Shown piece after piece: positions 4,213 to 44,098 of a stretch of DNA of 64,000 bases. Made by a program: the position numbers and the translations under genes. The DNA lies in IMG/VR virus record IMGVR_UViG_3300032334_002567, positions 1 through 64,000 of that record; one strand, given 5' to 3'. The notes below the pieces were generated by a model. It was not told where the DNA came from. It worked only from the letters and a program-made list of their open reading frames with translations, and did no database searches. The first letter of the stretch is position 1. Each line of letters starts with the position of its first letter.

Positions 4213-6039
4213 ATGTCAGAAAAATTTTGGATATCCACCCACGGTTCATTAAAGAAATTTTATGAAAGTGGTGGTATTGCAGATAGAAAAACTGGAAAAC
4301 TGCAGTATGATCCAAAATACTACACTTTTGATAAATATGAACTTGAAATTGATCCCACAGAAACACTAGAAGTTGTTGACCTTTATGATACTGCCAGACA
4401 ACAAAAAGAAATAATTAAATGTTGCAATTCTTTTCCTTATTTTTGTCACAAATATATAAGAATTCTTCATCCAATGAAAGGATTAATTCCTTTCGTATTA
4501 TTTAATTATCAAAGAAAAGTAATAAAAGATTATGAAAACAATAGATTCAATATTATTAGTAAATTTAGACAAGGAGGTTTGACGACAGTAACCTTACTTT
4601 GGGGTCTATGGAAGTGTATGTTTCAAATGGATCAACAAGTAATGTTAATCTCTAAAACAGATAGAGAGGCGACAGATACTGGGCTAATTATTGACAGAGC
4701 TTGTGAAAATTTACCTGCTTGGCTTAAGCCTAAAAAAGATGCAAAATGGAATGACCATTTAAAAATGTTTACAGATACAGGCTCTGCTATAAAGTTTTAT
4801 TCTCCAGAAGCTTCTCGTGGAAAAGCAGTAACTTTTTTAATAATAGACGAAGCTGCATTTATTGAAGATATGGACAAACACTGGAAAGCTATGTGGCCGG
4901 TTTTATCCACGGGTGGTTCTTGTACGCTGATATCAACGGTGAATGGTCTAGGAAATTGGTACGAACAAACGTATAGAGATGCCAAAGATAACAAAAATAA
5001 ATTCCACGTAATAGACCTAGATTTCTGGGAGCATCCTGATTACAACGATGACGACTGGATAGCCGAACAGAAAGCTCAGCTTGGAGAAAAAGGCTTTCTC
5101 CAAGAAGTAATGAGAGAGTTTCTAGGATCAGGAGAAACATATTTTCCAACTAAAACAATCACTCAATTAACCGAGCAAACTAGAAACAATTATCCTAATA
5201 GAAAGCTGTTTGCAAAATGGTGTAATAAAAATGGAAGAATGTCACAGCTAGAAGATGAATATTCTAAAGGTGCATTGTGGCTATGGAAAGAGCCGATAGA
5301 AGGCAGAGAATACATAATAGGAGCAGACTGTGCAGAGGGACAAGGCGAGAACAATGATAGTTCTTGTTTTCAAGTTATTGACACGAACAGTTTAGAACAA
5401 GTTGCTGAGTTTTATTCAAATACTATTTTACCTCATGAATTCGCACAAGTAATGAATGAGGTTGGAACATTTTACAACAATGCAATGTTGGCAATAGAAA
5501 ACATGGGTGCAGGAATGGCTGTTATTAGCAATCTTCAGCACACCCTTTATTATGATAATTTGTACTATGACACAACAAAAATTACAGCGAGCACAAAGCC
5601 CGGAATAAAGATGGGCCAAAATAATAGGTCATTATATCTCGAATGCCTTCAAAACAATATTATAAATCAATCTGTTCTAATTAATAGTATAAGATTTGTT
5701 ACAGAACTACAGACTTTCGAATATAATCCTACTACTAAAAAAGCACAGGCTCAAAAAGGAAAACATGATGATGCAATTATGGCAATGTCGATTGCTTTAT
5801 ACGTAAGAGAATCGTTAACTAGAGATTTGCCTATAGGAGCAGAGTCAAAAGATTCCGCAGCCTTAAAATCACAAGTTTACGATGAAATTAAAAAAGAACT
5901 AGAAGAAGGCATAGAAGATTTTATAAGTAATGAAGAAATAGATTTATTGGCTCCTAATATGGACACATTACACAACATAGATTTCTTCCCAAATGCCCAA
6001 AGAAAGAATGATAGCATAATAAAAGAATTTGGATGGTAA
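4213..6039 (+). CDS. Terminase large subunit, T4 gp17-like
   Basis: PFVLFNYQ, KFRQGGLTT, LIIDEAAF (Walker B), LISTVNG, QE..EFLG, YIIGADCAEG, AIEN, HDDAIMA (RNase H-like nuclease). Confidence 0.95.
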   Translation: MSEKFWISTHGSLKKFYESGGIADRKTGKLQYDPKYYTFDKYELEIDPTETLEVVDLYDTARQQKEIIKCCNSFPYFCHKYIRILHPMKGLIPFVLFNYQRKVIKDYENNRFNIISKFRQGGLTTVTLLWGLWKCMFQMDQQVMLISKTDREATDTGLIIDRACENLPAWLKPKKDAKWNDHLKMFTDTGSAIKFYSPEASRGKAVTFLIIDEAAFIEDMDKHWKAMWPVLSTGGSCTLISTVNGLGNWYEQTYRDAKDNKNKFHVIDLDFWEHPDYNDDDWIAEQKAQLGEKGFLQEVMREFLGSGETYFPTKTITQLTEQTRNNYPNRKLFAKWCNKNGRMSQLEDEYSKGALWLWKEPIEGREYIIGADCAEGQGENNDSSCFQVIDTNSLEQVAEFYSNTILPHEFAQVMNEVGTFYNNAMLAIENMGAGMAVISNLQHTLYYDNLYYDTTKITASTKPGIKMGQNNRSLYLECLQNNIINQSVLINSIRFVTELQTFEYNPTTKKAQAQKGKHDDAIMAMSIALYVRESLTRDLPIGAESKDSAALKSQVYDEIKKELEEGIEDFISNEEIDLLAPNMDTLHNIDFFPNAQRKNDSIIKEFGW

Positions 6040-8275: not shown

Positions 8276-9145
8276 ATGTATAAATTTTTAATTCTAATCT
8301 GCTTATTCTTTGCGGCATCTACAAATGTGAATGGGGTAGATTTTGATGCCCTAGATAAAATGCCAATTCTAGAGGCGTTGCCTACCGAATTAAGAGGGGC
8401 AGCTCCCGTAGAACAGAGAGGAACGGAGTACAGAAAGTTTTTAGCCCCCTCTGTAAAGATAAATGTGGGAAATGGAAGTGGATCAGGAACTATAATATTT
8501 TACGATAAAAAAGAAAATCTTGCATATGTGGCTTCTTGCGGACATTTATGGAATCCAGGTGTCCTAAACGCAGGAGAAGCTCTAAAGAAAAAATTAAAAT
8601 GCAAAGTAATATCATTCTATCAAAATGATAGCAAATTAGAGGAAGTTAAATCCTATGATGCAGATGTAATATTTTACAGTTATATTGATGGACAAGACAC
8701 ATCTTTAGTTGTATTCAAACCAGATTGGGTGCCTACGTATTTTCCTATAGCACCAAAAAACTATACTTATAACATAGGATCTTATTTACATTCATGTGGT
8801 TGTGACCATGGCAGTGAAGTCGCACATTATTCAGTAAAAACTTTAGAACTAAATCAAGACGTAGTTACAACGGAAAATAGTCCTAGACCGGGGAGATCGG
8901 GCGGTGGACTATTAGACGATGAAGGATATTATGTTGGAACTTGCTGGGGAACACAGTATGTGGACGGTAGTGGGAAAGGATTTTTTACACCCTTATCATC
9001 TATTCATAACTTTTGGTCAAAACAAAAAGGGTACGAATTTTTATTAAATCAAAAACCAAACAACATTTTGGCCAAGAATATTCCCATAAAGGACCGAACA
9101 GAAAAACAAAAAACATACACGCCAGACTATATTTTGGTGCCTTAA
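8276..9145 (+). CDS. Secreted trypsin-like (S1) serine protease
   Basis: Signal peptide; GSGSGTI, SCGH (His), QDTSL (Asp), PGRSGGGL (Ser); AGGAGG SD. Confidence 0.85.
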   Translation: MYKFLILICLFFAASTNVNGVDFDALDKMPILEALPTELRGAAPVEQRGTEYRKFLAPSVKINVGNGSGSGTIIFYDKKENLAYVASCGHLWNPGVLNAGEALKKKLKCKVISFYQNDSKLEEVKSYDADVIFYSYIDGQDTSLVVFKPDWVPTYFPIAPKNYTYNIGSYLHSCGCDHGSEVAHYSVKTLELNQDVVTTENSPRPGRSGGGLLDDEGYYVGTCWGTQYVDGSGKGFFTPLSSIHNFWSKQKGYEFLLNQKPNNILAKNIPIKDRTEKQKTYTPDYILVP

Positions 9146-9981
9146 AAGTTTTTTATAATTAACTCTTTGCCTTTTTGTTTGGTAGTGTTCTTACCATTAG
9201 CACTGGAAGTACCGCAATATGTCCATTTCTCTTCAATAATATTAAAACTTTTGTACATTTTACGAATAAAATTATTATTGTCGTAAGAAAGAACAATTTT
9301 ATGCTTAGATTGTTTTATATCTTCGCATAGTTTTTCATGATCCTTTTTTTCAAAGTTTTTTTCATAAAGCCTTGAAGAATTAGGTTGCTGTGTATTACAG
9401 AAATATGGGGGGTCTATATAAACTAAAACGTCTTTACCCTTTTCAAACAAAGGAACCTCATAGCTTTCACAGGTAACTTTTGTATCTTTTATTATTAAAG
9501 CTGCTCTTTCTAATTTATCAGTTTTTACTATATTCCATCCGCTAGGATTAGAGAAGTACATTCTTGATTTCATGCTATAGCGTACTCTACCACCCCATAC
9601 AGTTCGATGTATGAAAAGGTATCGAACTGCTTGATCCATCTCTGCGTCTTGAGAAAACTTATCAAAAGTATCTTTTAACTTAGAACTATAAATTGCCTTG
9701 CCTTTTCTTGCAGGTGCCAATATATCTTTGTTAGAAGCAGGCAATATTTTCTTGCACTTCTGAATGAACTGTTTTGGTCTATCTTTCAATGCTAAGTAGA
9801 CTGACATTAAATGCGGATCAGAGTCGTTTATCCATCTCTTGACATCTATGGGAATGTGGAAAAATATACCGCCTCCACCAACCATAATATCACGAAATTC
9901 GGCATAATTTTGCGGAAAATTAGCAACTATCTTTTCTCTAACAGACTTTCTACTTTTCCCGCCAGGATATCTAAAAATCAA
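9142..9981 (-). CDS. Dam-family (D12) DNA adenine methyltransferase
   Basis: FRYPGGKS, DIMVGGGG, WINDSD, YIDPPY, LSYD, ELII. Confidence 0.9.
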   Translation of the reverse strand: MIFRYPGGKSRKSVREKIVANFPQNYAEFRDIMVGGGGIFFHIPIDVKRWINDSDPHLMSVYLALKDRPKQFIQKCKKILPASNKDILAPARKGKAIYSSKLKDTFDKFSQDAEMDQAVRYLFIHRTVWGGRVRYSMKSRMYFSNPSGWNIVKTDKLERAALIIKDTKVTCESYEVPLFEKGKDVLVYIDPPYFCNTQQPNSSRLYEKNFEKKDHEKLCEDIKQSKHKIVLSYDNNNFIRKMYKSFNIIEEKWTYCGTSSANGKNTTKQKGKELIIKNF

Positions 9982-9992
9982 AAAGCACCTCT

Positions 9993-10769
9993 TTAGGTTA
10001 AACTATAAAAAGGACAAATAGGTCTGTATTCACAACGACGACATTGATCTCCCACCCGACCATAAACATCATTAGGGTGAGTAGAAATTATGTCCTTATA
10101 AGTTTCATGTAGCTCTGTCTGTGCCGAAGTTAAAGACTCTTCAGTAAACTTGGTGGCGACTAAATCAGCTCCATCTAAGTAGAAAAGGGCCGCTTTGATA
10201 TTTTCTGCCTTGGCACCAAATTCAAGTTGCACAACACGAGCATAACACCTCAACTGAATATCTTTTCTTATTGTATTTGAGTTCTTTCTCCAGCGACCTT
10301 TTTTAGTTGTTTTATAGTCTATAATAAAGAACTTATCGCCACGAATTATCAAACGATCCATGACGCCAGTTAAAAAATGATTATTTGGCGGGTCTAAATC
10401 AAAGTGAAAAAGATATTCAACTTTGCCATCAAACCCTATTCGATCATTGAAGTTTTTGATATTGTTAAGATGATCTCTAAATCTATTGCGATATTCTTTT
10501 TCTATTACAGGAGGCGGCTTGCCCTGTTCTACTTCGATTTTCCCAGACAAACAATCGTTAGCAATATCCTGAATTTTTGTTTGACCCTGATTTAAAACAT
10601 AAACTTCTGCAATTTTGTGCACAAGTTTTCCATAAACAAAATAAGGTTGAACAGGTTCATCGGATATTACTTTTAAGTGATATTTAAACCTATATTTTGC
10701 TTGACAATCTCGCCATATTTGCTGACGGGATACAGATATATGTTCACATAATAAATTATCATCTGACAT
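9993..10769 (-). CDS. PD-(D/E)XK RecB/Cas4-like exonuclease with putative Fe-S cysteines
   Basis: ISVS...DCQAKY, GKLVH, GVMDRL...IIDYKT, QLRCY, C-terminal CRRCEYRPIC. Confidence 0.88.
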   Translation of the reverse strand: MSDDNLLCEHISVSRQQIWRDCQAKYRFKYHLKVISDEPVQPYFVYGKLVHKIAEVYVLNQGQTKIQDIANDCLSGKIEVEQGKPPPVIEKEYRNRFRDHLNNIKNFNDRIGFDGKVEYLFHFDLDPPNNHFLTGVMDRLIIRGDKFFIIDYKTTKKGRWRKNSNTIRKDIQLRCYARVVQLEFGAKAENIKAALFYLDGADLVATKFTEESLTSAQTELHETYKDIISTHPNDVYGRVGDQCRRCEYRPICPFYSLT

Positions 10770-10803
10770 AAAAAACTTGCCTCAGTTGAATTTATTGAGT
10801 ATA

Positions 10804-10832
10804 TTGCAGCTGTTATTTTACGAGAATATAAT
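10804..10832 (+). promoter_or_regulatory. Sigma70-like promoter for primase
   Basis: TTGCAG-17 nt-TATAAT. Confidence 0.55.
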
Positions 10833-10851
10833 TTTCGTTCAAGAGAGAATC

Positions 10852-11910
10852 ATGTCAGTAAACTTTGATAAATTTGAAAGCTGGGCCCGTTTAAAATTCG
10901 GAGAAGATAATGTTGTAGTAAAAGGAAAAGAAATAAGAATCAATTCTATATTTGAGCCGGATGATACTGGTCATCATTTGTGGTGCAATCCAGAAGGTGG
11001 CAAAAAAAAGCACAAATATGGAGTTTTTCATTGCTTTAAAACCGATAATAAAGGGAGCCTTTTAAAGCTTGTTCAAATAGTTGAAAACTGTGATCGTGAA
11101 AGTGCTCTAGATCGAATAAAGGGTAGGACCCCTATCAGAGATCTAGAAAAAAAGCTTGAAGAGATATTTATTCAAGAAGAAGTAGAAATAAAAGAAGTAA
11201 AATCAGATCTTTCACTGCCTCCACAATGCTATTTAATTTCAGAATTAGGAACAAATAATTGGTGGAGAGAAAAAGCAGAAAATTATCTTCTTTCAAGAAA
11301 AATACCAATAGACGGTTTGTACATATGCACCGGGGATAGATATAAAGGAAGAATAGTTATTCCCTACTACGATAAACAAGAAAAATTAATTTATTTCAAC
11401 GGAAGAGCACTTGGAAGTTCTAAATGCAAGTATTTGGGTCCACCAAAAGAAGTTGGAGTTGGCAAAGAAGACGTAGTCTTTATGGCTGGTCGGTGGCCAA
11501 ACTCAGGAGAAACTGTTTATATCTGTGAAGGTGAATTTAATGCTTTGAGCCTTAAAATTGCTGAATTAAATGCTGCGGCTTGTGGTGGAAAAAACATGGG
11601 AGAAAAGCAAGCCATCCTATTGTCTGAGTATAAAGTTGTTTTATGCTTAGACAGAGACAAGGCTGGTAGAGCGGGTACTTTGAAAATGAGCTCTATCATG
11701 ACCTCTATGGAAACAGCAAAAAGCGGTAGTGGAAACAAGCTAATGTTTGTGTTCCCTCCTAAAGACTACAACGACTGGAATGAGTTTTTAGTGAGAAACA
11801 ATCCAGAGTTACTACACCATTATATAATCAAAAATCAAAAAAGCATCGATTACTCTGGGCCGAATGGAACAGCGTGTGACTTTTTTGGCTTTAGCGATAT
11901 ATGGAAGTAA
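10852..11910 (+). CDS. DnaG-type (Toprim) DNA primase
   Basis: RIVIPYY, YFNGR, KYLGP, ICEGEFNA, CLDRDKAG, DWNE; N-terminal Zn finger degenerate. Confidence 0.88.
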   Translation: MSVNFDKFESWARLKFGEDNVVVKGKEIRINSIFEPDDTGHHLWCNPEGGKKKHKYGVFHCFKTDNKGSLLKLVQIVENCDRESALDRIKGRTPIRDLEKKLEEIFIQEEVEIKEVKSDLSLPPQCYLISELGTNNWWREKAENYLLSRKIPIDGLYICTGDRYKGRIVIPYYDKQEKLIYFNGRALGSSKCKYLGPPKEVGVGKEDVVFMAGRWPNSGETVYICEGEFNALSLKIAELNAAACGGKNMGEKQAILLSEYKVVLCLDRDKAGRAGTLKMSSIMTSMETAKSGSGNKLMFVFPPKDYNDWNEFLVRNNPELLHHYIIKNQKSIDYSGPNGTACDFFGFSDIWK

Positions 11911-32363: not shown

Positions 32364-32660
32364 TTATTCAGGCAAGCCAGTTTTTAAAAGTTTTTGTCTT
32401 TCTTTTGGAACTAATCGCTCATCAGCTTGATTAACTTTTGCAACATTATTTTTTATTCTTTCTGTCCAAGCTGAGACTTTTTCAAATGGTATATCTAATA
32501 AATCTGCAACTCCTTTAGAGTCATTTAGCAAAGAGAGAAAATCATCCCAAAATTCACTCCTAATGCCTATTCCGTTCCTAATTGCCGACATAGCAGAATC
32601 TTCAGAATTGTTTTCATCATCTTGTCTTACTTTTTCCCATAGTTTCTGAAAAGATTTCAT
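32364..32660 (-). CDS. Hypothetical protein with capsid-targeting-like N-terminus
   Basis: MKSFQKLWE. Confidence 0.6.
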   Translation of the reverse strand: MKSFQKLWEKVRQDDENNSEDSAMSAIRNGIGIRSEFWDDFLSLLNDSKGVADLLDIPFEKVSAWTERIKNNVAKVNQADERLVPKERQKLLKTGLPE

Positions 32661-32694: not shown

Positions 32695-32719
32695 TATTTA
32701 TACTTTATGTGCATAAATA
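32695..32719. promoter_or_regulatory. Divergent late promoter pair
   Basis: TATAAATA on the minus strand (32695-32702) and CATAAATA on the plus strand (32712-32719). Confidence 0.6.
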
Positions 32720-32724
32720 AATAT

Positions 32725-33600
32725 ATGAATTTTAAAGAGTGGCTAACAATTTTAGAAGCAACAGATTTGGAAACAGCTCCTAGTGAAGCCATCCATATTC
32801 ATAAGACCCATGATGGAGATGGAGGAACCCAATACGTAGCCACCTTTCAAATAAACAAAGGATCAGAAAGAGTAGGGTTTAAAGTAGCTGCAGAATTATT
32901 AGAAGATGAAAAAATTAGAAAAAGAGACCAAAATGGAAAAATCTATTCCATTCCTTTGAAAGGGGTTCTTTCTATAGTTTTTGGCCCCGACAAAGGATAT
33001 GGAGATCCTTCTTATGACGTTTCTAATATTTGGGGGTCTAACGCAAAATATATCTATACAAATGTAATGGTGGCAGTAAATAAAATTATTGATAGTGTGA
33101 CAGAAACTGATGTGGATGGCCTTGTTTTTACAGCCTATGATCAACGAACAGAACCAATATATCATAGGATATATTTAACGCAATTAAAACCAAGGGGCTT
33201 TATAAAAGTAGCTGACGATATGTATGCTAAGAAGGAAGTACTAGAGGCTGGGTTAAAAAAATTCCCTCCGGATGTTCAAGAATTTATAAAAAATGATGTA
33301 GAGTCCGCAGAGAGAAAGACTGTAAACAGATTAGATGCCGTGAGAAGAGAAAAAATAGAATCCAGACAAAAAACAGTACAAGCAGAAAATTTAAAAAGAT
33401 TAATTGGAAAAATAGTTTTATATAAAAATAATCCTAAGTTTGAGGGCACTGTATCTTCTGGATTGCTTTGGTCTGTGGATATGTCGCAGCACTATGCTTT
33501 AATAAAAAATAAAAAATTACCTGCGGGGCGTGAAGAAGATGCTTCATCGTGGTATGGTTCCATACAGGTTCCGGTAATGGATGTTATTGGATTAAGCTAA
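32725..33600 (+). CDS. Hypothetical protein with capsid-targeting-like N-terminus
   Basis: MNFKEWLTILEA. Confidence 0.65.
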   Translation: MNFKEWLTILEATDLETAPSEAIHIHKTHDGDGGTQYVATFQINKGSERVGFKVAAELLEDEKIRKRDQNGKIYSIPLKGVLSIVFGPDKGYGDPSYDVSNIWGSNAKYIYTNVMVAVNKIIDSVTETDVDGLVFTAYDQRTEPIYHRIYLTQLKPRGFIKVADDMYAKKEVLEAGLKKFPPDVQEFIKNDVESAERKTVNRLDAVRREKIESRQKTVQAENLKRLIGKIVLYKNNPKFEGTVSSGLLWSVDMSQHYALIKNKKLPAGREEDASSWYGSIQVPVMDVIGLS

Positions 33601-34346
33601 AAATTTTTCCAAATAACTTCTACTTTTTTTGTTTTACTCTTTATCTTTGATTTGCAAAAGTTCCAATTTTTATAAAGTCTGCTATAGAGGGGGGAAGTAG
33701 CTCCACTTATCACAACTTTGCCTCTAAAAGAATTTAGCAAATGTGACAATTGAATATGAGCATCTGTCGTTATTTCGGAACTATAAACGGTTTTACTCTT
33801 TTTATTTTCATAAAGATAAGGAGGACAACAATACAGCAGACTATCTGCAGAATTGAAAGTTGTAATTATTTCTAAAGGCTTATTGTTAAAGATAAAAACT
33901 TCTTGAAGACGGTCAGAAGTATCTTTCAAATCTTTTATAGATTCTTTCCAATCATCTGTACTAGATTTTGCAAATGTTTTTTTCAACTCTCCTCTACTCA
34001 TTTTTCTTAAAACATACTCATTCACAGCACCATCTAAATAGTCATCATTTGATTGCTTTTTTTGAAGCTTTAAAAAAGTATCTTCACAATACTTAAAACG
34101 AGTAAGCTTTTTAGTCATTTCCTTAGGCTCATCTCTTAGAGCTCTATAAACATCAATTAAAGAAGCATCGACGTAATTTAAAACTTCTAAGTAAGACTTA
34201 TTTTTTACGAAAAGAACATTGGGTTCAACACAATACGGCTCTACATAAACCAATTCACAATAGTTTTCTGGAAATTGTGATGCTATCCATTTAGCTAGTG
34301 ATCTTTTGCTGTTACCTGATTTTGAAATAGTCTTAAGCGTTTTCAT
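33597..34346 (-). CDS. Dam-like methyltransferase homologue with degenerate catalytic and SAM-binding motifs
   Basis: Dam layout (KRSLAKWI..FP, YVEP, EVLN, LSHLLNSFRGKVVISG, EVIWKNF) but CPPY replaces DPPY. Confidence 0.8.
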   Translation of the reverse strand: MKTLKTISKSGNSKRSLAKWIASQFPENYCELVYVEPYCVEPNVLFVKNKSYLEVLNYVDASLIDVYRALRDEPKEMTKKLTRFKYCEDTFLKLQKKQSNDDYLDGAVNEYVLRKMSRGELKKTFAKSSTDDWKESIKDLKDTSDRLQEVFIFNNKPLEIITTFNSADSLLYCCPPYLYENKKSKTVYSSEITTDAHIQLSHLLNSFRGKVVISGATSPLYSRLYKNWNFCKSKIKSKTKKVEVIWKNF

Positions 34347-34560
34347 TTTTTTCCTTAGTCGGACTGTATATCTCGTGTCCGCACACGCAACAAATAAACT
34401 CAAATGGTCCGTAACCAAGCTTAGAACCCTCCCAAAACCAACCGGCTTCGGAAATCTTGTCCCTACCACATTTTTGACAAAATACACTGATCTTCTGATT
34501 GTCAGTTTTTTGATGTGGATCTACCCAAAAGTAACAATCTTCTAGCATTTGTCGCTCCAA
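34333..34560 (-). CDS. Small Zn-ribbon protein
   Basis: CQKC...CCVCG. Confidence 0.6.
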   Translation of the reverse strand: MERQMLEDCYFWVDPHQKTDNQKISVFCQKCGRDKISEAGWFWEGSKLGYGPFEFICCVCGHEIYSPTKEKNENA

Positions 34561-34646: not shown

Positions 34647-35063
34647 ATGGCTAATTCACTTTATGACATTGGAAGAAACGGATTTTTAAATGGCGATATA
34701 GATTTTTTAAATGACACAATAAAAATGGCATTGGTAAAAGATTCTTATTCTCCTGATTTGTCTATGGATGAGTATTACAGCGACGTATCCTCCAATATTA
34801 TTTCTACACCACAAGCACTATCAGGAAAAACCACAAGTGCGGGTGTTGCAAATTGCTCAGACGTAACTTTTACAGCAGTCCCAGCAGGGGCTCCCACGCC
34901 AAACACAATAGGATACATTTTAATATTTAAATACACAGGAAATGATGCCACATCTCCTTTAATAGCATTATATGATACAGCTTCCGGCTTACCTATAATT
35001 ACAAGTAATGCAGATATTACAATAAAAATTGATACGGGCGTTAATAAACTATTTAAGCTATAA
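34647..35063 (+). CDS. Phage tail-associated structural protein
   Basis: MANSLYD.GR..FL.GDIDF..DTIKMALV...DVTFTAV...SPLIALYD...GLPI; AGGAG SD; CTAAATA upstream. Confidence 0.7.
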   Translation: MANSLYDIGRNGFLNGDIDFLNDTIKMALVKDSYSPDLSMDEYYSDVSSNIISTPQALSGKTTSAGVANCSDVTFTAVPAGAPTPNTIGYILIFKYTGNDATSPLIALYDTASGLPIITSNADITIKIDTGVNKLFKL

Positions 35064-37724: not shown

Positions 37725-38789
37725 ATGAACAAAATTCTTTTATTTTCTGATATTCATATTTTCCCACACAAACGTAAAAATGAACGGCTAGAGGACTGCC
37801 TCTCTGCGTTGCGGTGGGTTTTTAAAACAGCCGAGTCTAGAGGGATTAAAAACTTACTTTTTGGCGGTGATTTTTTTCATGATAGACAAAAAATAGACGT
37901 ATATACCTATCAAAAAACCTTTGAAATACTCCAAGAACAAATGAATAATTCTGACATAGAATTGTTTCTTTTACTTGGAAACCATGATATATGGTTCAAC
38001 GATAATACAAGTATTAGCAGCGTATTCCCGTTATCTGCCCTAAGGGGTGTGCATTTAATTGCAAAGCCAGAAAGAATAAAAATAGAAGGACATAATTGGG
38101 ATTTTATACCATTCACACACAATCCAATAGAAGCATTAAAACAATTAAAAGAAAAAGACGGAAGTCCTGAGTTTGCATTGGGTCATATTGCAATAGATGG
38201 CGCAATATTACACCACAACCAATATTCTGATGTTTGCGTTGAACACGATGGGGACATGGTTCCTATTAACTCTTCCTTATTTGAGGAATATAAACACACA
38301 TTTCTGGGTCATTACCACGCAGAACAAAGAGTGAGCAAAAAAGTCGAATACATCGGCTCTCCTCTGCAACTTAGCTTTGGAGAAGCATTTCAAGAAAAGC
38401 ATATAATTATATTTGACGGTGACAAAAATGAAAGAGAATACATAAAAAATGAATTCTCTCCCAAACATCTAATTTTAAACATAGAAGAATGCAAAAACCA
38501 TTCTTTAGATGGTAATTTTGTTCAAATAAAAGTAGATGAAGATAAAATTGGAACAACAGACCTGATCGCCTTGAAAAAAGAACTAATACAAACAAATAAA
38601 ATTGGAAGTTTGGAGATCAGACATCAGAAGAAAAAAATAGAAGAGCATGTGATAAAAGACGCTAAAGCTATACTTCTTAAAGGAGAAGAAATGCTATCAA
38701 AATACGTAGAAGAAGTTGGTTCAAATGAACTAGACAAAAAAATACTAATAGAAGTAGGAAAGAAAATTTGCAGAAAGGCAGAAAAATGA
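37725..38789 (+). CDS. SbcD/Mre11 nuclease (T4 gp47-like)
   Basis: SDIH, GGDFFH, LGNHD, GH, LGHYH, YIGSPLQLSFGE. Confidence 0.93.
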   Translation: MNKILLFSDIHIFPHKRKNERLEDCLSALRWVFKTAESRGIKNLLFGGDFFHDRQKIDVYTYQKTFEILQEQMNNSDIELFLLLGNHDIWFNDNTSISSVFPLSALRGVHLIAKPERIKIEGHNWDFIPFTHNPIEALKQLKEKDGSPEFALGHIAIDGAILHHNQYSDVCVEHDGDMVPINSSLFEEYKHTFLGHYHAEQRVSKKVEYIGSPLQLSFGEAFQEKHIIIFDGDKNEREYIKNEFSPKHLILNIEECKNHSLDGNFVQIKVDEDKIGTTDLIALKKELIQTNKIGSLEIRHQKKKIEEHVIKDAKAILLKGEEMLSKYVEEVGSNELDKKILIEVGKKICRKAEK

Positions 38790-39502
38790 ATTACGTTGTA
38801 ACTGGAATCAATGAAGGATATTGGCAAAATTGGGGTTCTTCTTGGATATTGTCTCTCAGAGATGTAGCAAAGTACCAAGGTAAGGTGCTTGTAGTTGCTC
38901 ACAATCTGTCTGACTCTACAAAAAATAAACTAAAAAGCAAAGAAGTAGAAATAGTTGAATGTGAAAAAGATGAAGCTAGTGTGCGAACTTCTACTATAAG
39001 AAAAATAATAGAAAGAGCAGAAAAAGGAAACAATAAATTTGTGTATTGGGATGCTGATGTTTTCTTTCAAGAAGAAATAGATAGCATATTTGATTTAATT
39101 GAAGATAAGTTTTTGGTCACAAAAAATCTGAACAAAGGGTTCATTGCCGCTCAGGGCAAAAGATGGAACACATTAGAAGACATTGAAAAGTTCATGGAGT
39201 TAGCCAAAGATAACATTGTTTATGAAAAAATGTTTGATCTGTTGGTTAAAAATATGGAAAGGCTAACAACTAAAATTGAAGATACTTGGAACTTCATAGA
39301 AATACAAGAAGCTAAAAAGAATGAACTAGGGTTAATTACACATAAAGAAATTTTACAAAAAGCAATACACCCTACAGGAAATATTAAGCATACAATTTCT
39401 GGGGGTGGTTTTCTCTTTTTTGAAAAAGAAAAAGAAAAACACCAGAACTTCATTTCTTCAAAAAATCAAACTACAAGAAAACTCTTAACAAAAAAGCACT
39501 AA
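38786..39502 (+). CDS. GT-A fold glycosyltransferase-like protein
   Basis: YVVTGINEGY, SLR, FVYWDADVFFQ (DxD), WNF. Confidence 0.65.
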   Translation: MNYVVTGINEGYWQNWGSSWILSLRDVAKYQGKVLVVAHNLSDSTKNKLKSKEVEIVECEKDEASVRTSTIRKIIERAEKGNNKFVYWDADVFFQEEIDSIFDLIEDKFLVTKNLNKGFIAAQGKRWNTLEDIEKFMELAKDNIVYEKMFDLLVKNMERLTTKIEDTWNFIEIQEAKKNELGLITHKEILQKAIHPTGNIKHTISGGGFLFFEKEKEKHQNFISSKNQTTRKLLTKKH

Positions 39503-39509
39503 GAGAAAA

Positions 39510-41543
39510 ATGAGAAATCTTGATTTTAAGTATGCCGGGGCTTGGAATTTTTTACCATTTGGCCCCGAAGGCGTAGAAATTAAATTTAAGGACTATGGAA
39601 ACATAGTCCTTATAGAAGGACTGAATAAAGACGCCAAGCCTATAGACGAGCCATTAGATGACTTGAAAATGAGCAGTAATGGAACTGGGAAAAGTAGCAT
39701 ACAGGAAATTATAGTTTTTACTTTATATGGAAAAACAATAAAACGACCAGAAAAAATAAACATTGACGATGTAGTTCACAACAAGATTGGCAAGGACTGC
39801 CGCTGTGTTGTTGAGTTCGACAAATATCGCATTGTCAGAACAAGGATAGAAGGTGGTAAAAAGAATAAGAATAGTCTTCGCTTGTGGGAAAGCGAAGAAG
39901 CAAAATGGGACGACTCGACAGAGCTCACTTTAGGAAGCATGTCGAACACACAAAAAAAGATAGAAGAAATTATTGGTTTATCTTATGAAAGTTTTGTAAA
40001 CATTTGTATTTTTACAGATGACCAAAGATCCTGTTTCTTAGAATGTGATAAAAACACAAAAAGAGAAATTGTAGAAAACTTATTATCTTTGGGAGAGTAT
40101 AGGGAGTGGTTTGAGAACGCAAAGTCTATTAAAAAAGAAACAAAAAATAAAATAGATTTTCAGTCTAAAGAATATTCTTTATTTTTAAGAAATAAAGAAG
40201 ATGCAGAAAAAAGACTAACTCTCACGGAGAGTAAAAAAGATCAATGGATTAGACAAAAAAAAGAAGAACAAATTCAACTGGAGAACAATATAGAGTTTAA
40301 AAAGAAAGAACTTAAGAACTCGGACACGGGAGCAGCACTTGTTCTATACCAAGAAGCACAAGAACTTATATCTAAAATAAACGAAGATACACCCGAGATA
40401 GAGAAAGAAAGAAAAGAGCTTGTTGATAGAATTATTTTAATAGAAGGAAAAGAAGAAACGCAGAAAGAAGCGGCCCAAAAGGTATCAGAACAGCTTAAAG
40501 ACTGTTCCAGAGAAATTAAATACAAACTTGAAGAAAGAAAGCAAAAAGAAAAAGAAATAGAAGAGCTCCAAAAAGAAGTTCCAGGATCCAAATGCAATAA
40601 ATGCAAAAGTACAGTTGAATCAAAAAATATAGAAGAATATGTAAAAGAACTACAAAAAGAATTAAATGATATCAATGATTATATTAAGGGTCAAGCAAAG
40701 GTTGTAGAAGATACAAAAGAAAAAGTAGAAAACGTAAAAGCAAACCAAGAAAAATTAAGCAAGTTGAGATCTCAAACAGAGATTAAAATAAAAGAAATAG
40801 ACAAAAAACTTGCTGATCTTCGGGCAAAATTTGCAGAGGCAAGCAAAATAAAAGAACCAAAGACAGAAAATCGTGAACTAATTATTCAACAAAAAATAGA
40901 AGAACTTAAAAACCAGCTATCGGCTAAAAAAGATGAACAAAAAAATGGTTCGCCTTTTGAGGATATATTACAAAACGGCAAAGAAGAACTAAAAGAAATA
41001 AATAAAGTTACGGAAGAAAAAAAGAAAGAAATAGAAGTTTTAGAAAAAGAATTGCCTTACTACGACTATTGGATTTCTGGGTTTGGTGAACAAGGAATAA
41101 GAAAATGGATAATAGAAGGTATAATACCAGATTTAAACAAAAAGATAAATTATTGGCTTCAATTCCTCATTGAAGGAATGGTGTCTTTGTCTTTTGATAA
41201 TGAGCTACAAGAGAAGATTGAAAGAAGCCCACCAGACGGAGATCCCTACATTTATTATGCAATGAGCACAGGCCAAAGAAGAAGATTAAATTTAGCCGTT
41301 GGTCACTCTTTTGCATATATTACAGAATTAAGTTCTGATGCGATTCCGAGCTTGATTTTCTTAGACGAAGTGACTACAAATGTCGATCCTCTTGGAGTAC
41401 ATGGGATATACAACATGATTAGAGAGCTTGCAGAAAATAAACAAGTTTTTATAACTACGCACGATCCCGATTTAGTAAAAATGTTAGATGATTCATCAAA
41501 AATAAAACTTGTTCATGAGAACGGTTTTACTAAAAAGGTTTGA
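39510..41543 (+). CDS. SbcC/Rad50 ATPase (T4 gp46-like)
   Basis: NFLPFG, SNGTGKSS, coiled coil with CNKC hook, MSTGQRRR, FLDE, ITTH. Confidence 0.94.
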   Translation: MRNLDFKYAGAWNFLPFGPEGVEIKFKDYGNIVLIEGLNKDAKPIDEPLDDLKMSSNGTGKSSIQEIIVFTLYGKTIKRPEKINIDDVVHNKIGKDCRCVVEFDKYRIVRTRIEGGKKNKNSLRLWESEEAKWDDSTELTLGSMSNTQKKIEEIIGLSYESFVNICIFTDDQRSCFLECDKNTKREIVENLLSLGEYREWFENAKSIKKETKNKIDFQSKEYSLFLRNKEDAEKRLTLTESKKDQWIRQKKEEQIQLENNIEFKKKELKNSDTGAALVLYQEAQELISKINEDTPEIEKERKELVDRIILIEGKEETQKEAAQKVSEQLKDCSREIKYKLEERKQKEKEIEELQKEVPGSKCNKCKSTVESKNIEEYVKELQKELNDINDYIKGQAKVVEDTKEKVENVKANQEKLSKLRSQTEIKIKEIDKKLADLRAKFAEASKIKEPKTENRELIIQQKIEELKNQLSAKKDEQKNGSPFEDILQNGKEELKEINKVTEEKKKEIEVLEKELPYYDYWISGFGEQGIRKWIIEGIIPDLNKKINYWLQFLIEGMVSLSFDNELQEKIERSPPDGDPYIYYAMSTGQRRRLNLAVGHSFAYITELSSDAIPSLIFLDEVTTNVDPLGVHGIYNMIRELAENKQVFITTHDPDLVKMLDDSSKIKLVHENGFTKKV

Positions 41544-41776
41544 TTGTGAAAAGAGAAATCAGCATTGTTTCTGTTGTTTTTGTATTGGTTGGATTCTTTT
41601 TTATAATTGGTTATGTATCAAAGGAACAAGCAAAAAATATTTCAAATTTTCCATGCACAACTTGGCATAAAAACCATTGTAGGCTTTGCGGAAAAATATT
41701 TTTATGCGAAGAAGGAGTAAAAATGCTCAAAATAGATGTAAAAAACAACAATAATTCACAACAAAAAAATTTTTGA
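41540..41776 (+). CDS. Small membrane protein with Cys/His cluster
   Basis: One TM segment, then C..WH..HCRLC. Confidence 0.45.
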   Translation: MIVKREISIVSVVFVLVGFFFIIGYVSKEQAKNISNFPCTTWHKNHCRLCGKIFLCEEGVKMLKIDVKNNNNSQQKNF

Positions 41777-41824
41777 ACCGACAAACATTAGATAAGTTTC
41801 ATGCAAAAAGAAGAAAGGTGAAAA

Positions 41825-44098
41825 ATGTCAAAGCAACACAAGAAAACGAGAAACTTTCACGCTGGAATGGGTCAAGCTGTAGCGGAGAGAACGATTCTCA
41901 GAAAGAAAGAAGATGGTAAGTGGGAAACATGGGCAGATGTTGCCAATCGTGTTGCACTAGGAAATTCACTTCTATGCAAAGAATCAAAAGAACAAGAGTC
42001 AGAATATGAGGCTTTACAAAAGCATTTAATAAACGCAACAACTCTTATGAGCGGTAGACATCTACAGCACGGAGATGAGTCGCAACCAGAAAGAAACATG
42101 GAAGTTTACACCAACTGTTCAACTTCCAGCACTAGCTTCATGCTTTTTTACTTATTAATGAACGGTTCTGGTGTGGGTAGAAGTTATGACGACGACATGA
42201 TGCTTGTTGATTGGGATAACGCTCCAGCTCTTAGGTGTGTTTTAAGTGAAACTCATGCAAATTTTGATTTTTCGGCTCACGAATCTGTGAGAGATGCAAA
42301 ACACAAATATGGCAGCGGCAAAGACGTTTTATGGCATCTCGTTGAAGATACAAGAGAGGGATGGGCAAAAGCACTAGAAATATGGGAAAATGCAGCTTTT
42401 GAAAAAATCCATAAAGATAAATTGTTCATACTTGACTTTTCAAACGTTCGACCAAAAGGTGCTCCTATAAATGGAATGCAGAAACGTCCAGCTAGCGGAC
42501 CTGTTCCCTTGATGAACGCATTCAACAAAGCTGCAACTCTAAAAGCAACTGGTTTGCCCCGGTGGATGCAGACAATTTATATTGATCATTATTTTGCCGA
42601 ATGTGTTTTGGTCGGTGGGGCCAGAAGAGCAGCAAGAATGTCTACTAAGACATGGAGAGATGATAGTGTGTTAGAATTTATTACTATCAAAAGACCAATT
42701 GAATTTGCCAATAAAGGGGTAGATGAAATAACAGAGCTAAGAAAGCAAATAAGTCCAATGGGATTCTTGTGGTCTTCAAACAATAGCATTACTGTTGACC
42801 AAGAATTCTGGAAGCTCTTGAATGTAAAAAAAGGTAGTGAAGAATATAGTTCTGAATTAGCCAAACATGCAAGGAATGTTTATAAACTTGCAGTTTCTGC
42901 TTCTTATGGTGATGGCACTGGTGAGCCTGGATTTATCAATGTTGACAAACTAAATCAAGATAAGCTCGGAACTGAGAAGCTTGTTAAAGAAAGTGACTCA
43001 CTTGTTGGTAGCAAAAAATATAGCTTAAATGAAGACACAGGACTTTATATTAATAGGCTTTTGAAGAAAGCTGTTAAAAAACAGCATTTCATGATAACCA
43101 ATCCATGTGGTGAAATTTCTATTGCTGTGTGGGGTGCTTTTTGCACTATTGCGGATGTGGTTCCTTATCATGCTGAAACCTTGGAAGAAGCAGAAGACGC
43201 ATTTAGGTGTGTTACAAGAGCTTTAATCAGGGTAAACACCATGGATAGTGTTTATAAAAAAGAAGTTAAAAGAACTAACAGAATAGGAGTTGGAATAACT
43301 GGGATTCATGAATTTGCATGGAAGTTCTTTGGATTAGGATTTAAAGATCTAATAAATGAAGAAAAGTCCAAGGAATTTTGGATGACTATGGCAAGATTTA
43401 AAAGAGCCGTGCAAGACGAAGCCAGAGAATACTCAAAGAAAATTGGCGTAAATGTTCCTCATTCTGACACGACAATTAAGCCTGCTGGCACAACGAGTAA
43501 ATTATTTGGCCTCACAGAGGGATGGCATCTACCGTCTATGAGATGGTACATGAGATGGGTTCAATTCAGTAAATCAGATCCATTGGTCAAAAAGTATAGT
43601 GAATCTGGTTACCCTGTGAAAGAACTGACTAGCTACCAGAATACTGTTATTATCGGATTTCCAACTACCCCAGTTATAACTGAGCTTGGGATGGAAGACG
43701 CCCTGATTACAGCCGGTGAAGCTTCACCAGAAGAGCAGTACAAGTGGTTAATGCTCGGTGAAAAATACTGGATTCGTGGCGTAGATGTTGACGGAAATCC
43801 ACTAGATAAAGATACGGGAAACCAAATTAGCTACACGTTAAAGTACAACCCCAATAAGGTTGATTTTAAGACTTTCTGTGACACGCTAAAAAATAGTCAG
43901 AGCCTAATTAAATGTTGTTCGGTAATGCCACAAGAAGATCGTAGCAGTTATGAATATTTACCAGAGGAATCGGTGACAAAAGCAGAATACGAAAACGTTG
44001 TAAGAAAAATTACTTCTTCTTTGCAGGAAGACGTAGATCGTACACACGTAGATTGTGCAGGCGGTGCATGTCCCGTTGACTTTAAGAAAGAATCATGA
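41825..44098 (+). CDS. nrdJ: Class II (adenosylcobalamin-dependent) ribonucleotide reductase
   Basis: TNCS, GSGVG, GGARRAA, GEPG, TNPCGE, RIGVG, TTIKPAGTTS, C-terminal CAGGACP; no beta-subunit gene in the window. Confidence 0.88.
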   Translation: MSKQHKKTRNFHAGMGQAVAERTILRKKEDGKWETWADVANRVALGNSLLCKESKEQESEYEALQKHLINATTLMSGRHLQHGDESQPERNMEVYTNCSTSSTSFMLFYLLMNGSGVGRSYDDDMMLVDWDNAPALRCVLSETHANFDFSAHESVRDAKHKYGSGKDVLWHLVEDTREGWAKALEIWENAAFEKIHKDKLFILDFSNVRPKGAPINGMQKRPASGPVPLMNAFNKAATLKATGLPRWMQTIYIDHYFAECVLVGGARRAARMSTKTWRDDSVLEFITIKRPIEFANKGVDEITELRKQISPMGFLWSSNNSITVDQEFWKLLNVKKGSEEYSSELAKHARNVYKLAVSASYGDGTGEPGFINVDKLNQDKLGTEKLVKESDSLVGSKKYSLNEDTGLYINRLLKKAVKKQHFMITNPCGEISIAVWGAFCTIADVVPYHAETLEEAEDAFRCVTRALIRVNTMDSVYKKEVKRTNRIGVGITGIHEFAWKFFGLGFKDLINEEKSKEFWMTMARFKRAVQDEAREYSKKIGVNVPHSDTTIKPAGTTSKLFGLTEGWHLPSMRWYMRWVQFSKSDPLVKKYSESGYPVKELTSYQNTVIIGFPTTPVITELGMEDALITAGEASPEEQYKWLMLGEKYWIRGVDVDGNPLDKDTGNQISYTLKYNPNKVDFKTFCDTLKNSQSLIKCCSVMPQEDRSSYEYLPEESVTKAEYENVVRKITSSLQEDVDRTHVDCAGGACPVDFKKES

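What the first reader, a model, noticed from the sequence alone, without database searches (positions are those of the whole stretch)
33597..34346. Intact but apparently catalytically dead Dam homologue alongside a canonical Dam
Seen: the ORF is uninterrupted, yet DPPY is CPPY, the SAM loop EPFxGxG is EPYCVEP, YxGGK is SGNSK and NDxD is NYVD. A canonical copy lies at 9142-9981. Inference: concerted loss of SAM-binding and catalytic motifs without frameshift suggests repurposing as a site-specific DNA-binding protein (site masking, regulator or decoy).
Basis: partly seen in the sequence, partly recalled or inferred. Interest (0 to 1): 0.6.

Follow-up and report, generated by a model that had tools for sequence, protein, structure and literature searches.

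The report
Dead Dam-like gene kept by selection
A huge phage keeps, under strong purifying selection, a DNA-methylase look-alike that has lost its cofactor, catalytic and DNA-reading parts and always follows a tiny zinc-ribbon gene, which points to a job that does not need methylation.

Summary
Window 33597-34346 (-) is an intact 249-aa D12/Dam-fold protein: Pfam PF02086 at 45 bits, AF2 pLDDT 90, TM 0.77 to E. coli Dam. All four cofactor and catalytic motifs are altered: SGNSK, EPYCVEP, LNYVD, CPPY. It is not decaying. dN/dS against a 90%-identical relative is 0.06, the same as for canonical family members and a neighbouring helicase. Ten natural variants keep the altered motifs.

It is not a copy of the canonical Dam at 9142-9981 (23% identity). 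It is the positional counterpart of a separate D12 subfamily found almost only on huge-phage contigs. That subfamily has two forms:
- A "long" form keeps all motifs.
- A "short" form has lost the tip of the DNA-reading hairpin and a C-terminal loop, and nearly always some motifs.

The long/short state changes at least 4-5 times on the tree.

In every locus checked (18 aligned loci, 4 distant ones and one MAG contig), the gene is directly preceded by a conserved ~70-aa four-cysteine zinc-ribbon gene, usually with overlap.

Best reading: a pseudo-methyltransferase kept for a methylation-independent role that the family already had, probably working with the zinc-ribbon protein.

The parts
33597..34346 (-). 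Intact 249-aa D12/Dam-fold gene of the 'short' form. The cofactor motifs X, I and II and the catalytic motif IV are all altered, and the DNA-reading hairpin and C-terminal loop are shortened.
   Evidence: AF2 model pLDDT 89.9. Foldseek TM 0.77 to E. coli Dam 4rtj. dN/dS 0.059.
34333..34548 (-). 71-aa acidic zinc-ribbon gene with four invariant Cys (CxxC...CxxC) and a core GWFWEGSKLGYGPF. It overlaps the start of the Dam-like gene by 14 nt and is its conserved upstream partner.
   Evidence: Present directly upstream on the same strand in 18 of 18 loci, in 4 of 4 distant homologues and in L040. dN/dS 0.125. No Pfam, PHROG, NCBIfam or PADLOC family. Single copy in the 381-kb genome.
34352..34356 (-). 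AAGGA ribosome-binding site, 5 nt before ATG 34346 and inside the 3' end of the zinc-ribbon gene. This layout fits translational coupling.
   Evidence: Read from the sequence.
32364..32660 (-). 98-aa gene of unknown function, found within 1-4 kb of the pair in 17 of 18 loci. It has an HTH-like stretch (..GLS.LLDVP..KIS.W..). Its link to the pair is loose and may only reflect shared gene order.
   Evidence: No family hit.
9142..9981 (-). Canonical D12 Dam paralogue with all motifs intact. It shares only 23% identity with the dead gene and is not its sister. It is listed for context and is not part of the module.

Best explanation
The gene encodes a pseudo-methyltransferase. It is the positional counterpart, in this 381-kb phage, of a D12 (Dam-fold) subfamily found almost only in huge phages, and that subfamily's ancestral form is a normal SAM-dependent DNA methylase. 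In this lineage the protein first lost the tip of the DNA-reading hairpin and a C-terminal DNA-contact loop. It then lost the residues that hold SAM (motifs X, I, II) and the catalytic Asp (motif IV). It therefore almost certainly neither binds SAM nor transfers methyl groups.

It is nevertheless kept under purifying selection as strong as that on intact family members. The family must therefore have a second, methylation-independent function, and that is all that remains here. The gene is always translated just behind, and usually overlapping, a conserved acidic four-Cys zinc-ribbon gene. I infer that the two products act together. The most likely form of this is a small complex in which the basic Dam-fold scaffold still holds nucleic acid, with low or altered sequence specificity, without modifying it. 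That would be a regulatory or structural role in phage DNA metabolism.

Shown: homology, fold, motif loss, loop deletions, selection, repeated evolution, gene pairing.
Inferred: loss of SAM binding and activity (about 0.9), a shared function with the zinc-ribbon protein (about 0.5), nucleic-acid binding as the retained activity (about 0.35).
For: - Homology and fold.
- Motif loss.
- Motif stability: the altered motifs are the same in 10 variants of 89-96% identity.
- Selection: dN/dS is 0.059, against 0.040-0.045 for canonical long-form pairs, 0.032 for the neighbouring PIF1-like helicase and 0.046 for the S8 peptidase. There are no substitutions in residues 172-234 between the window and its relative.
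- Two forms: 19 of 23 long forms keep all four motifs, and 25 of 26 short forms have lost at least one.
- Repeated evolution: long/short changes 5 times on the tree, with at least 4 forced by well-supported branches. The motif IV Asp changes at least 7 times. Both results hold when the trait columns are removed.
- No new site: no position is conserved only in the short forms, so nothing suggests a new active site. 38 positions are conserved at 90% or more in both forms, including K9, which aligns with the DNA-contact residue K9 of E. coli Dam (PMC4417163).
- Charge: short forms stay basic, pI 9.1 on average and +13 for the window protein. The zinc-ribbon protein is acidic, pI 5.2.
- Pairing. 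The pair persists where the other neighbours differ (glutamate dehydrogenase, thioredoxin and Fe-S genes in place of helicase and nuclease genes).
- One version per genome: in the records searched, each genome carries either a long or a short version at this position, not both.
- Distribution: the family is nearly absent from 185,579 prokaryote genomes, with one hit on a 77-kb MAG contig that shares gene order with the window.
Against: - No biochemical data exist. Loss of SAM binding is inferred from motifs, not measured, and I could not inspect the model's pocket.
- The complex prediction for the zinc-ribbon protein with the Dam-like protein gave no answer, so binding is supported only by gene order.
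- The hairpin and C-loop deletions argue against canonical Dam-like DNA reading, so even non-specific DNA binding is uncertain.
- The link between loop loss and motif loss rests on only 4 independent contrasts (2-3 in the same direction, 0 opposite, p about 0.25).
- No RNA data show expression.
- All relatives come from a few related phage lineages, so conserved adjacency could partly reflect shared gene order.
Confidence: 0.55

Rival explanations
1. It is the non-catalytic subunit of a heteromeric methylase, binding the canonical Dam of the same genome (9142-9981) and tuning its activity or targeting. This would resemble METTL14 with METTL3 or DNMT3L with DNMT3A.
For: This genome has both a dead and a live D12 gene. 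Dead-plus-live methylase pairs are established in eukaryotes (general knowledge).
Against: The two share only 23% identity, lie 24 kb apart and belong to different D12 subfamilies. A short-form relative (G002, 52% complete) shows no second D12 gene, and the 100%-complete long-form genome G003 has only the family member. So the pairing is not general. Dam-type enzymes act as monomers on DNA (general knowledge; the E. coli Dam structures listed).
Confidence: 0.08
2. It is an anti-defence decoy or inhibitor. The Dam-shaped scaffold binds a host protein, for example a restriction or sensor component that normally engages DNA or a phage methylase, rather than binding DNA.
For: Huge phages carry many counter-defence genes, and the family is phage-restricted. 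Short forms have long branches and variable surfaces (end branches 0.2-0.6, against 0.02-0.3 for most long forms of the main clade). That pattern would fit an arms race.
Against: Within the window's lineage, constraint is very strong (dN/dS 0.06) with no sign of diversifying change. Nothing points to a particular host target. PADLOC hits are only generic type II and orphan methylase models.
Confidence: 0.12
3. It is still an enzyme: a methyltransferase with unorthodox motifs, or a Dam-fold protein with new chemistry that uses the Cys now at the catalytic position.
For: The PP-Tyr part of motif IV and motifs V-VIII are strongly conserved. Motif IV variants NPPY and SPPY are active in other methylase classes (general knowledge).
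Against: The first Gly of motif I is Val, followed by Glu-Pro. The motif II acid is Tyr and GGK is NSK, so three separate SAM contacts are gone. Cys at motif IV is not shared by the other short forms, which carry S, A, N, K or D. No position is conserved only in short forms.
Confidence: 0.05
4. It is a young pseudogene that has not yet picked up a stop codon and is decaying neutrally.
For: Several motifs were lost together. One relative's copy (L025) is split across several frames.
Against: dN/dS is 0.059 at dS 0.55, with 58 synonymous against 19 non-synonymous differences. The frame is intact in 10 variants and in about 30 short-form relatives down to 38% identity. Other genes in L025 are also split, so that contig looks rich in indel errors. 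Its close relative P0030 is intact.
Confidence: 0.02

Closest known systems
Dam-type (D12, alpha-group) DNA adenine methyltransferases: E. coli Dam, T4 Dam, DpnM, PDB 7m6b
   Same: Same fold and domain order: TM 0.77 to 4rtj, and family profile E 2e-23 to 7m6b and 2.5e-19 to 2dpm. The long-form relatives have every motif.
   Different: The window protein lacks GGK, the motif I glycines, the motif II acid and the motif IV Asp. It also has a hairpin 9 residues shorter and no C-terminal NHSSQ loop. It follows an obligate upstream zinc-ribbon gene, which is not a feature of known Dam genes.
Eukaryotic pseudo-methyltransferase subunits (METTL14, DNMT3L, ciliate MTA9)
   Same: A methylase fold with a degenerate cofactor or catalytic site, kept by selection for a non-catalytic role. 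This comparison rests on general knowledge, not on a test here.
   Different: Those proteins are paralogues that pair with an active sister enzyme. Here the dead gene replaces the active one at the same genomic position, and the constant partner is a small zinc-ribbon protein. No sequence relationship beyond the Rossmann fold was found.
Trm112, a small zinc-ribbon activator of several methyltransferases
   Same: A small four-Cys zinc-ribbon protein genetically tied to a Rossmann-fold methylase that carries an (N/D)PPY-type motif. This is a resemblance from general knowledge.
   Different: No match to the Trm112 family or to any other family at E up to 1. Binding is unproven. The targets of Trm112 partners are RNA or protein, not DNA.
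Methylation-independent DNA binding by E. coli Dam
   Same: A precedent that a Dam-fold protein can occupy DNA without methylating it and may act as a repressor (PMC4417163).
   Different: That binding uses the intact hairpin (R124, L122, P134, Y119, N120), which is truncated here.

Membership tests
D12-class DNA adenine methyltransferase (PF02086 / Dam) | Sequence and fold homology to the family | tested here: met
   PF02086 at 44.8 bits against a cut-off of 22. Foldseek TM 0.72-0.77 to E. coli Dam, DpnM and 7m6b. It falls below the TIGR00571 cut-off, 60.9 against 114.85.
D12-class DNA adenine methyltransferase (PF02086 / Dam) | Motif I FxGxG glycine loop for SAM | tested here: not met
   Y-C-V-E-P where the family has F-C-G-G-A. 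The change is conserved in 10 variants.
D12-class DNA adenine methyltransferase (PF02086 / Dam) | Motif X (GGK) and the motif II acidic residue after strand 2 | tested here: not met
   G-N-S-K in place of H-G-G-K. L-N-Y-V-D in place of I-N-D-x-D.
D12-class DNA adenine methyltransferase (PF02086 / Dam) | Catalytic motif IV DPPY | tested here: not met
   C-P-P-Y.
D12-class DNA adenine methyltransferase (PF02086 / Dam) | Full-length DNA-recognition hairpin | tested here: not met
   The hairpin is 9 residues shorter than in long-form relatives. Strand elements are predicted at residues 125, 131-132 and 135-136 of the long-form model P0014, whereas the corresponding stretch of the window protein's model (residues 126-129) is predicted as coil. 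The alignment to the E. coli Dam hairpin is.
D12-class DNA adenine methyltransferase (PF02086 / Dam) | SAM-dependent methyl transfer to DNA | not testable with these tools
   Needs biochemistry or methylome data.
Pseudo-methyltransferase partner subunit (METTL14 / DNMT3L type) | Degenerate active site under purifying selection | tested here: met
Pseudo-methyltransferase partner subunit (METTL14 / DNMT3L type) | A constant active paralogue in the same genome that it binds | tested here: inconclusive
   Present in this genome. Not seen in short-form relative G002, which is only 52% complete. Binding was not tested.
Trm112-like zinc-ribbon plus methyltransferase pair | Partner is a small four-Cys zinc ribbon | tested here: met
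   C24, C27, C53 and C56 are invariant in 16 sequences.
Trm112-like zinc-ribbon plus methyltransferase pair | Homology of the partner to Trm112 | tested here: not met
   No Trm112 hit at E up to 1 in Pfam. No named family in the Atlas.
Trm112-like zinc-ribbon plus methyltransferase pair | Physical complex of the two proteins | tested here: inconclusive
   The complex job returned 'no answer', which is evidence neither for nor against.

The most novel reading that the evidence does not exclude
Huge phages carry a two-gene module, a zinc-ribbon protein plus a Dam-fold protein, whose indispensable function does not need methyl transfer. Catalysis, cofactor binding and DNA-reading loops have been discarded repeatedly (at least 4-5 times) while both genes stay under strong constraint. 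If so, the 'DNA methylase' of this family moonlights, together with the zinc-ribbon protein, in an unrecognised process of phage DNA handling or regulation. The dead forms would be natural separation-of-function mutants that expose it.
Probability: 0.4. Interest if true: 0.7.

Novelty: new variant of a known kind. Interest (0 to 1): 0.6.

Why it matters
Pipelines annotate these genes as 'DNA adenine methylase'; JGI names several cluster members so. That annotation would mislead predictions of phage methylomes and of restriction evasion.

Pseudo-methyltransferases are well known in eukaryotes. I found no description of a selectively maintained dead Dam-fold protein in phages.

The repeated loss of catalysis with the gene and its zinc-ribbon partner retained gives a ready-made comparative system, with live and dead counterparts at the same locus, for finding a non-catalytic function of a DNA methylase.

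Tried and rejected
- **Complex prediction.** The zinc-ribbon protein with the Dam-like protein returned 'no answer'. It is not used as evidence either way.
- **Second Dam as a general companion.** A search for other D12 genes in five relatives' records does not support this. Many of those records are incomplete.
- **L025 as a decaying copy.** Rejected, because several other genes on that contig are also split.
- **Family scans of the zinc-ribbon gene and the 98-aa gene.** Pfam, PHROGs, NCBIfam and PADLOC gave nothing. The Atlas gave only viral hypothetical clusters.
- **Literature.** Searches for inactive Dam homologues or phage pseudo-methylases found no precedent.
- **Sequencing runs.** Only DNA metagenomes hold the stretch and none is RNA.
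- **Independent-contrast test of loop loss against motif loss.** Too few contrasts (4) to reach significance.
- **Large profile search.** Not run, because the word search already gave enough relatives and no claim here rests on absence of relatives.

Full report
**What is there**

Window 33597-34346 (minus strand) is an uninterrupted 249-codon gene.
- The open frame extends upstream to a GTG at 34487. Every relative starts at the MKT.. methionine, and an AAGGA sits 5 nt before that ATG.
- An open frame of this length is not expected by chance in this 35% GC DNA. About 1.5e-4 such frames are expected in the window.
- The product is a D12-class (Dam-fold) homologue: PF02086 at 44.8 bits over nearly the whole profile, two PHROG 'DNA methyltransferase' families, and TIGR00571 below its cut-off.
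- An AlphaFold2 model built on 38 sequences is confident (pLDDT 89.9, pTM 0.87).
- Its best structural matches are E. coli Dam (TM 0.77), DpnM, PDB 7m6b and T4 Dam.

The window belongs to a 381,443-bp virus record judged 79% complete. It is a huge phage with terminase, primase, SbcCD-like, PIF1-like helicase and class II ribonucleotide reductase genes nearby.

**The motifs**

| Motif | Family consensus | Window protein |
|---|---|---|
| X | HGGK | GNSK |
| I | EPFCGGA | EPYCVEP |
| II | INDxD | LNYVD |
| IV | CDPPY | CCPPY |

The first glycine of motif I, the acidic residue after strand 2 and the motif IV Asp are the standard SAM and catalytic contacts of this enzyme class (established knowledge of Dam-type enzymes). 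Losing all of them together makes SAM-dependent methyl transfer very unlikely. I put this at about 0.9, but it is an inference, not a measurement.

The canonical copy at 9142-9981 is real and has every motif. It shares only 23% identity with the dead gene.

**Not decay**

A relative on ENA lake-metagenome scaffolds (locus L005) is 89.7% identical in DNA and has the same gene order.
- Between the two genes there are 58 synonymous and 19 non-synonymous differences: dS 0.55, dN 0.032, dN/dS 0.059.
- For comparison, canonical members of the same family give 0.040-0.045. The neighbouring PIF1-like helicase gives 0.032, an S8 peptidase 0.046, and other neighbours 0.04-0.13.
- No amino-acid change falls in residues 172-234.
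- Ten natural variants of 89-96% identity all keep the altered motifs.

**The family**

A word search found 36 relatives of 38-93% identity, nearly all from metagenomes. A scan of viral contigs found 19 loci on contigs up to 533 kb.
- The best public phage match is the 595-kb uncultured phage LR756511.
- A scan of one genome for each of 185,579 prokaryote species found a single locus. It lies on a 77-kb MAG contig that shares gene order with the window.

The alignment shows two forms:
- **Long form.** It has HGGK, FCGGA, INDxD and DPPY. Its hairpin ends in ..RGGQPGDVNAW, and it has a C-terminal ..ANHSSQ.. loop.
- **Short form, which includes the window.** It lacks 9 hairpin residues and the C-terminal loop.

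The two features track each other. 19 of 23 long forms keep all four motifs, and 25 of 26 short forms have lost at least one. The changes among short forms are varied: motif IV Asp becomes C, S, A, N or K, and PPY becomes PPH, PPF, PPI, PPE, PPN or PPC.

The hairpin aligns with the E. coli Dam recognition hairpin, whose R124, L122, P134, Y119 and N120 make the base contacts. The deleted C-terminal loop aligns with the region of R249, a minor-groove contact (PMC4417163). A model of long-form P0014 shows short strand elements in the hairpin region and a low-confidence C-terminal loop. The window protein's model has only a short coil in the hairpin region.

**Repeated evolution**

On a maximum-likelihood tree, long forms are short-branched and basal or paraphyletic.
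- Most short forms fall in one group of 22 rows.
- Others arose separately. P0010 is sister to canonical P0017. P0036 and L023 sit among canonical P0037 and P0038. L022 and P0015 are further cases.
- The long/short state changes 5 times, with at least 4 forced by strongly supported branches. The motif IV Asp changes at least 7 times.
- The counts hold when all trait columns are left out of the tree.
- The root rests on one very long outgroup branch. The direction from long to short is argued mainly from the fact that D12 enzymes in general have these elements.
- Only 4 phylogenetically independent contrasts exist for loop loss against motif loss (2-3 concordant, 0 discordant, p about 0.25). 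The raw association is therefore suggestive, not proven.

In the window's own well-supported 9-member clade, P0004 is short but still has all four motifs. This suggests that the loops were lost first and the motifs drifted afterwards.

No column is conserved only in short forms, so nothing points to a new active site. 38 positions are conserved at 90% or more in both forms, including PP of motif IV, motifs V-VIII and K9.

**The partner gene**

Directly upstream on the same strand lies a 71-aa gene (34333-34548), which overlaps the start of the Dam-like gene by 14 nt.
- It has four invariant cysteines and a conserved aromatic core.
- A homologue sits in that position in all 18 loci compared, for long and short forms alike.
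- A profile search found 166 such proteins.
- Four of the most distant ones (31-39% identity) each have a PF02086 gene immediately downstream, although the other neighbours differ: glutamate dehydrogenase, thioredoxin, Fe-S and aminotransferase genes. The MAG locus is the same.
- The gene is single-copy in this genome, acidic (pI 5.2, against 9.3 for the Dam-like protein) and under purifying selection (dN/dS 0.125).
- It matches no curated family.
- A complex prediction returned 'no answer' and is not evidence either way.

**Interpretation**

In the records searched, each genome carries either a long or a short version at this position, not both. The dead gene is therefore a positional counterpart that lost catalysis, not a spare duplicate.

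A gene that can lose cofactor binding, catalysis and DNA-reading loops several times, yet stay as constrained as its intact relatives, must have another function. The constant zinc-ribbon partner is the best clue to that function.

I favour a small complex in which the basic Dam-fold scaffold still holds nucleic acid with low or altered specificity, serving regulation or DNA handling. This last step is inference, at about 0.35.

The rivals are set out in the Rival explanations section:
- a non-catalytic partner of the canonical Dam;
- a counter-defence decoy;
- a residual or new enzyme activity;
- a young pseudogene.

E. coli Dam does show that methylation-independent DNA occupancy by this fold is possible (PMC4417163).

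**Comparison and novelty**

The protein has the Dam fold but fails every catalytic membership test, so it should not be filed as a DNA methylase.
- It behaves like the eukaryotic pseudo-methyltransferases METTL14, DNMT3L and MTA9. Unlike them, it replaces the active enzyme rather than pairing with it.
- The pairing with a zinc-ribbon protein recalls Trm112, without detectable homology.
- I found no published description of this.
- I rate it a new variant of a known kind, with interest 0.6.

Noticed in passing
window 9142-10769 (-): The canonical Dam (9142-9981) lies 11 nt downstream of a PD-(D/E)XK / Cas4-like nuclease gene (9993-10769; PF12705, E 4e-27) on the same strand. They may form a methylase-nuclease pair. 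A DnaG-like primase gene runs divergently at 10777-11910.
   Followed up: partly
window 32707-33600 (+): A 297-aa gene with no family hit converges on the Dam-like gene and overlaps its stop codon by 4 nt. It is conserved in L005 (289 aa, dN/dS 0.13).
   Followed up: partly
window 34647-35063 (+); L040 2279-2683: A 138-aa protein matching phrog_644 (unknown function, E 8e-34) sits just upstream of the zinc-ribbon gene on the other strand. It is in the same place in the MAG contig L040.
   Followed up: no
L025 5700-6800 and elsewhere in L025: The Dam-like gene of this IMG/VR contig is split over at least five frames. Several other genes of the locus are also split, which looks like an indel-rich assembly rather than real pseudogenes.
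   Followed up: partly
G000:C1:87685-87837 (outside the window): A third, weak D12-like match (E 0.0035, 15 bits, profile positions 20-74) lies inside a 227-aa open frame of the same phage genome.
   Followed up: no
L035 2703-3437; L037 2724-3503; L040 2983-3705: These are further short forms with other motif IV states (CPPC, DPPC, KPPY). L040 also lacks the whole motif X region at its N-terminus.
   Followed up: partly
window 37725-44098 (+): This stretch holds an SbcD/SbcC-like nuclease-ATPase pair (Metallophos; AAA_23/SMC_N) followed by a class II (B12-dependent) ribonucleotide reductase. A T4-type large terminase lies at 4213-6039. No tRNA genes were found in the window.
   Followed up: no
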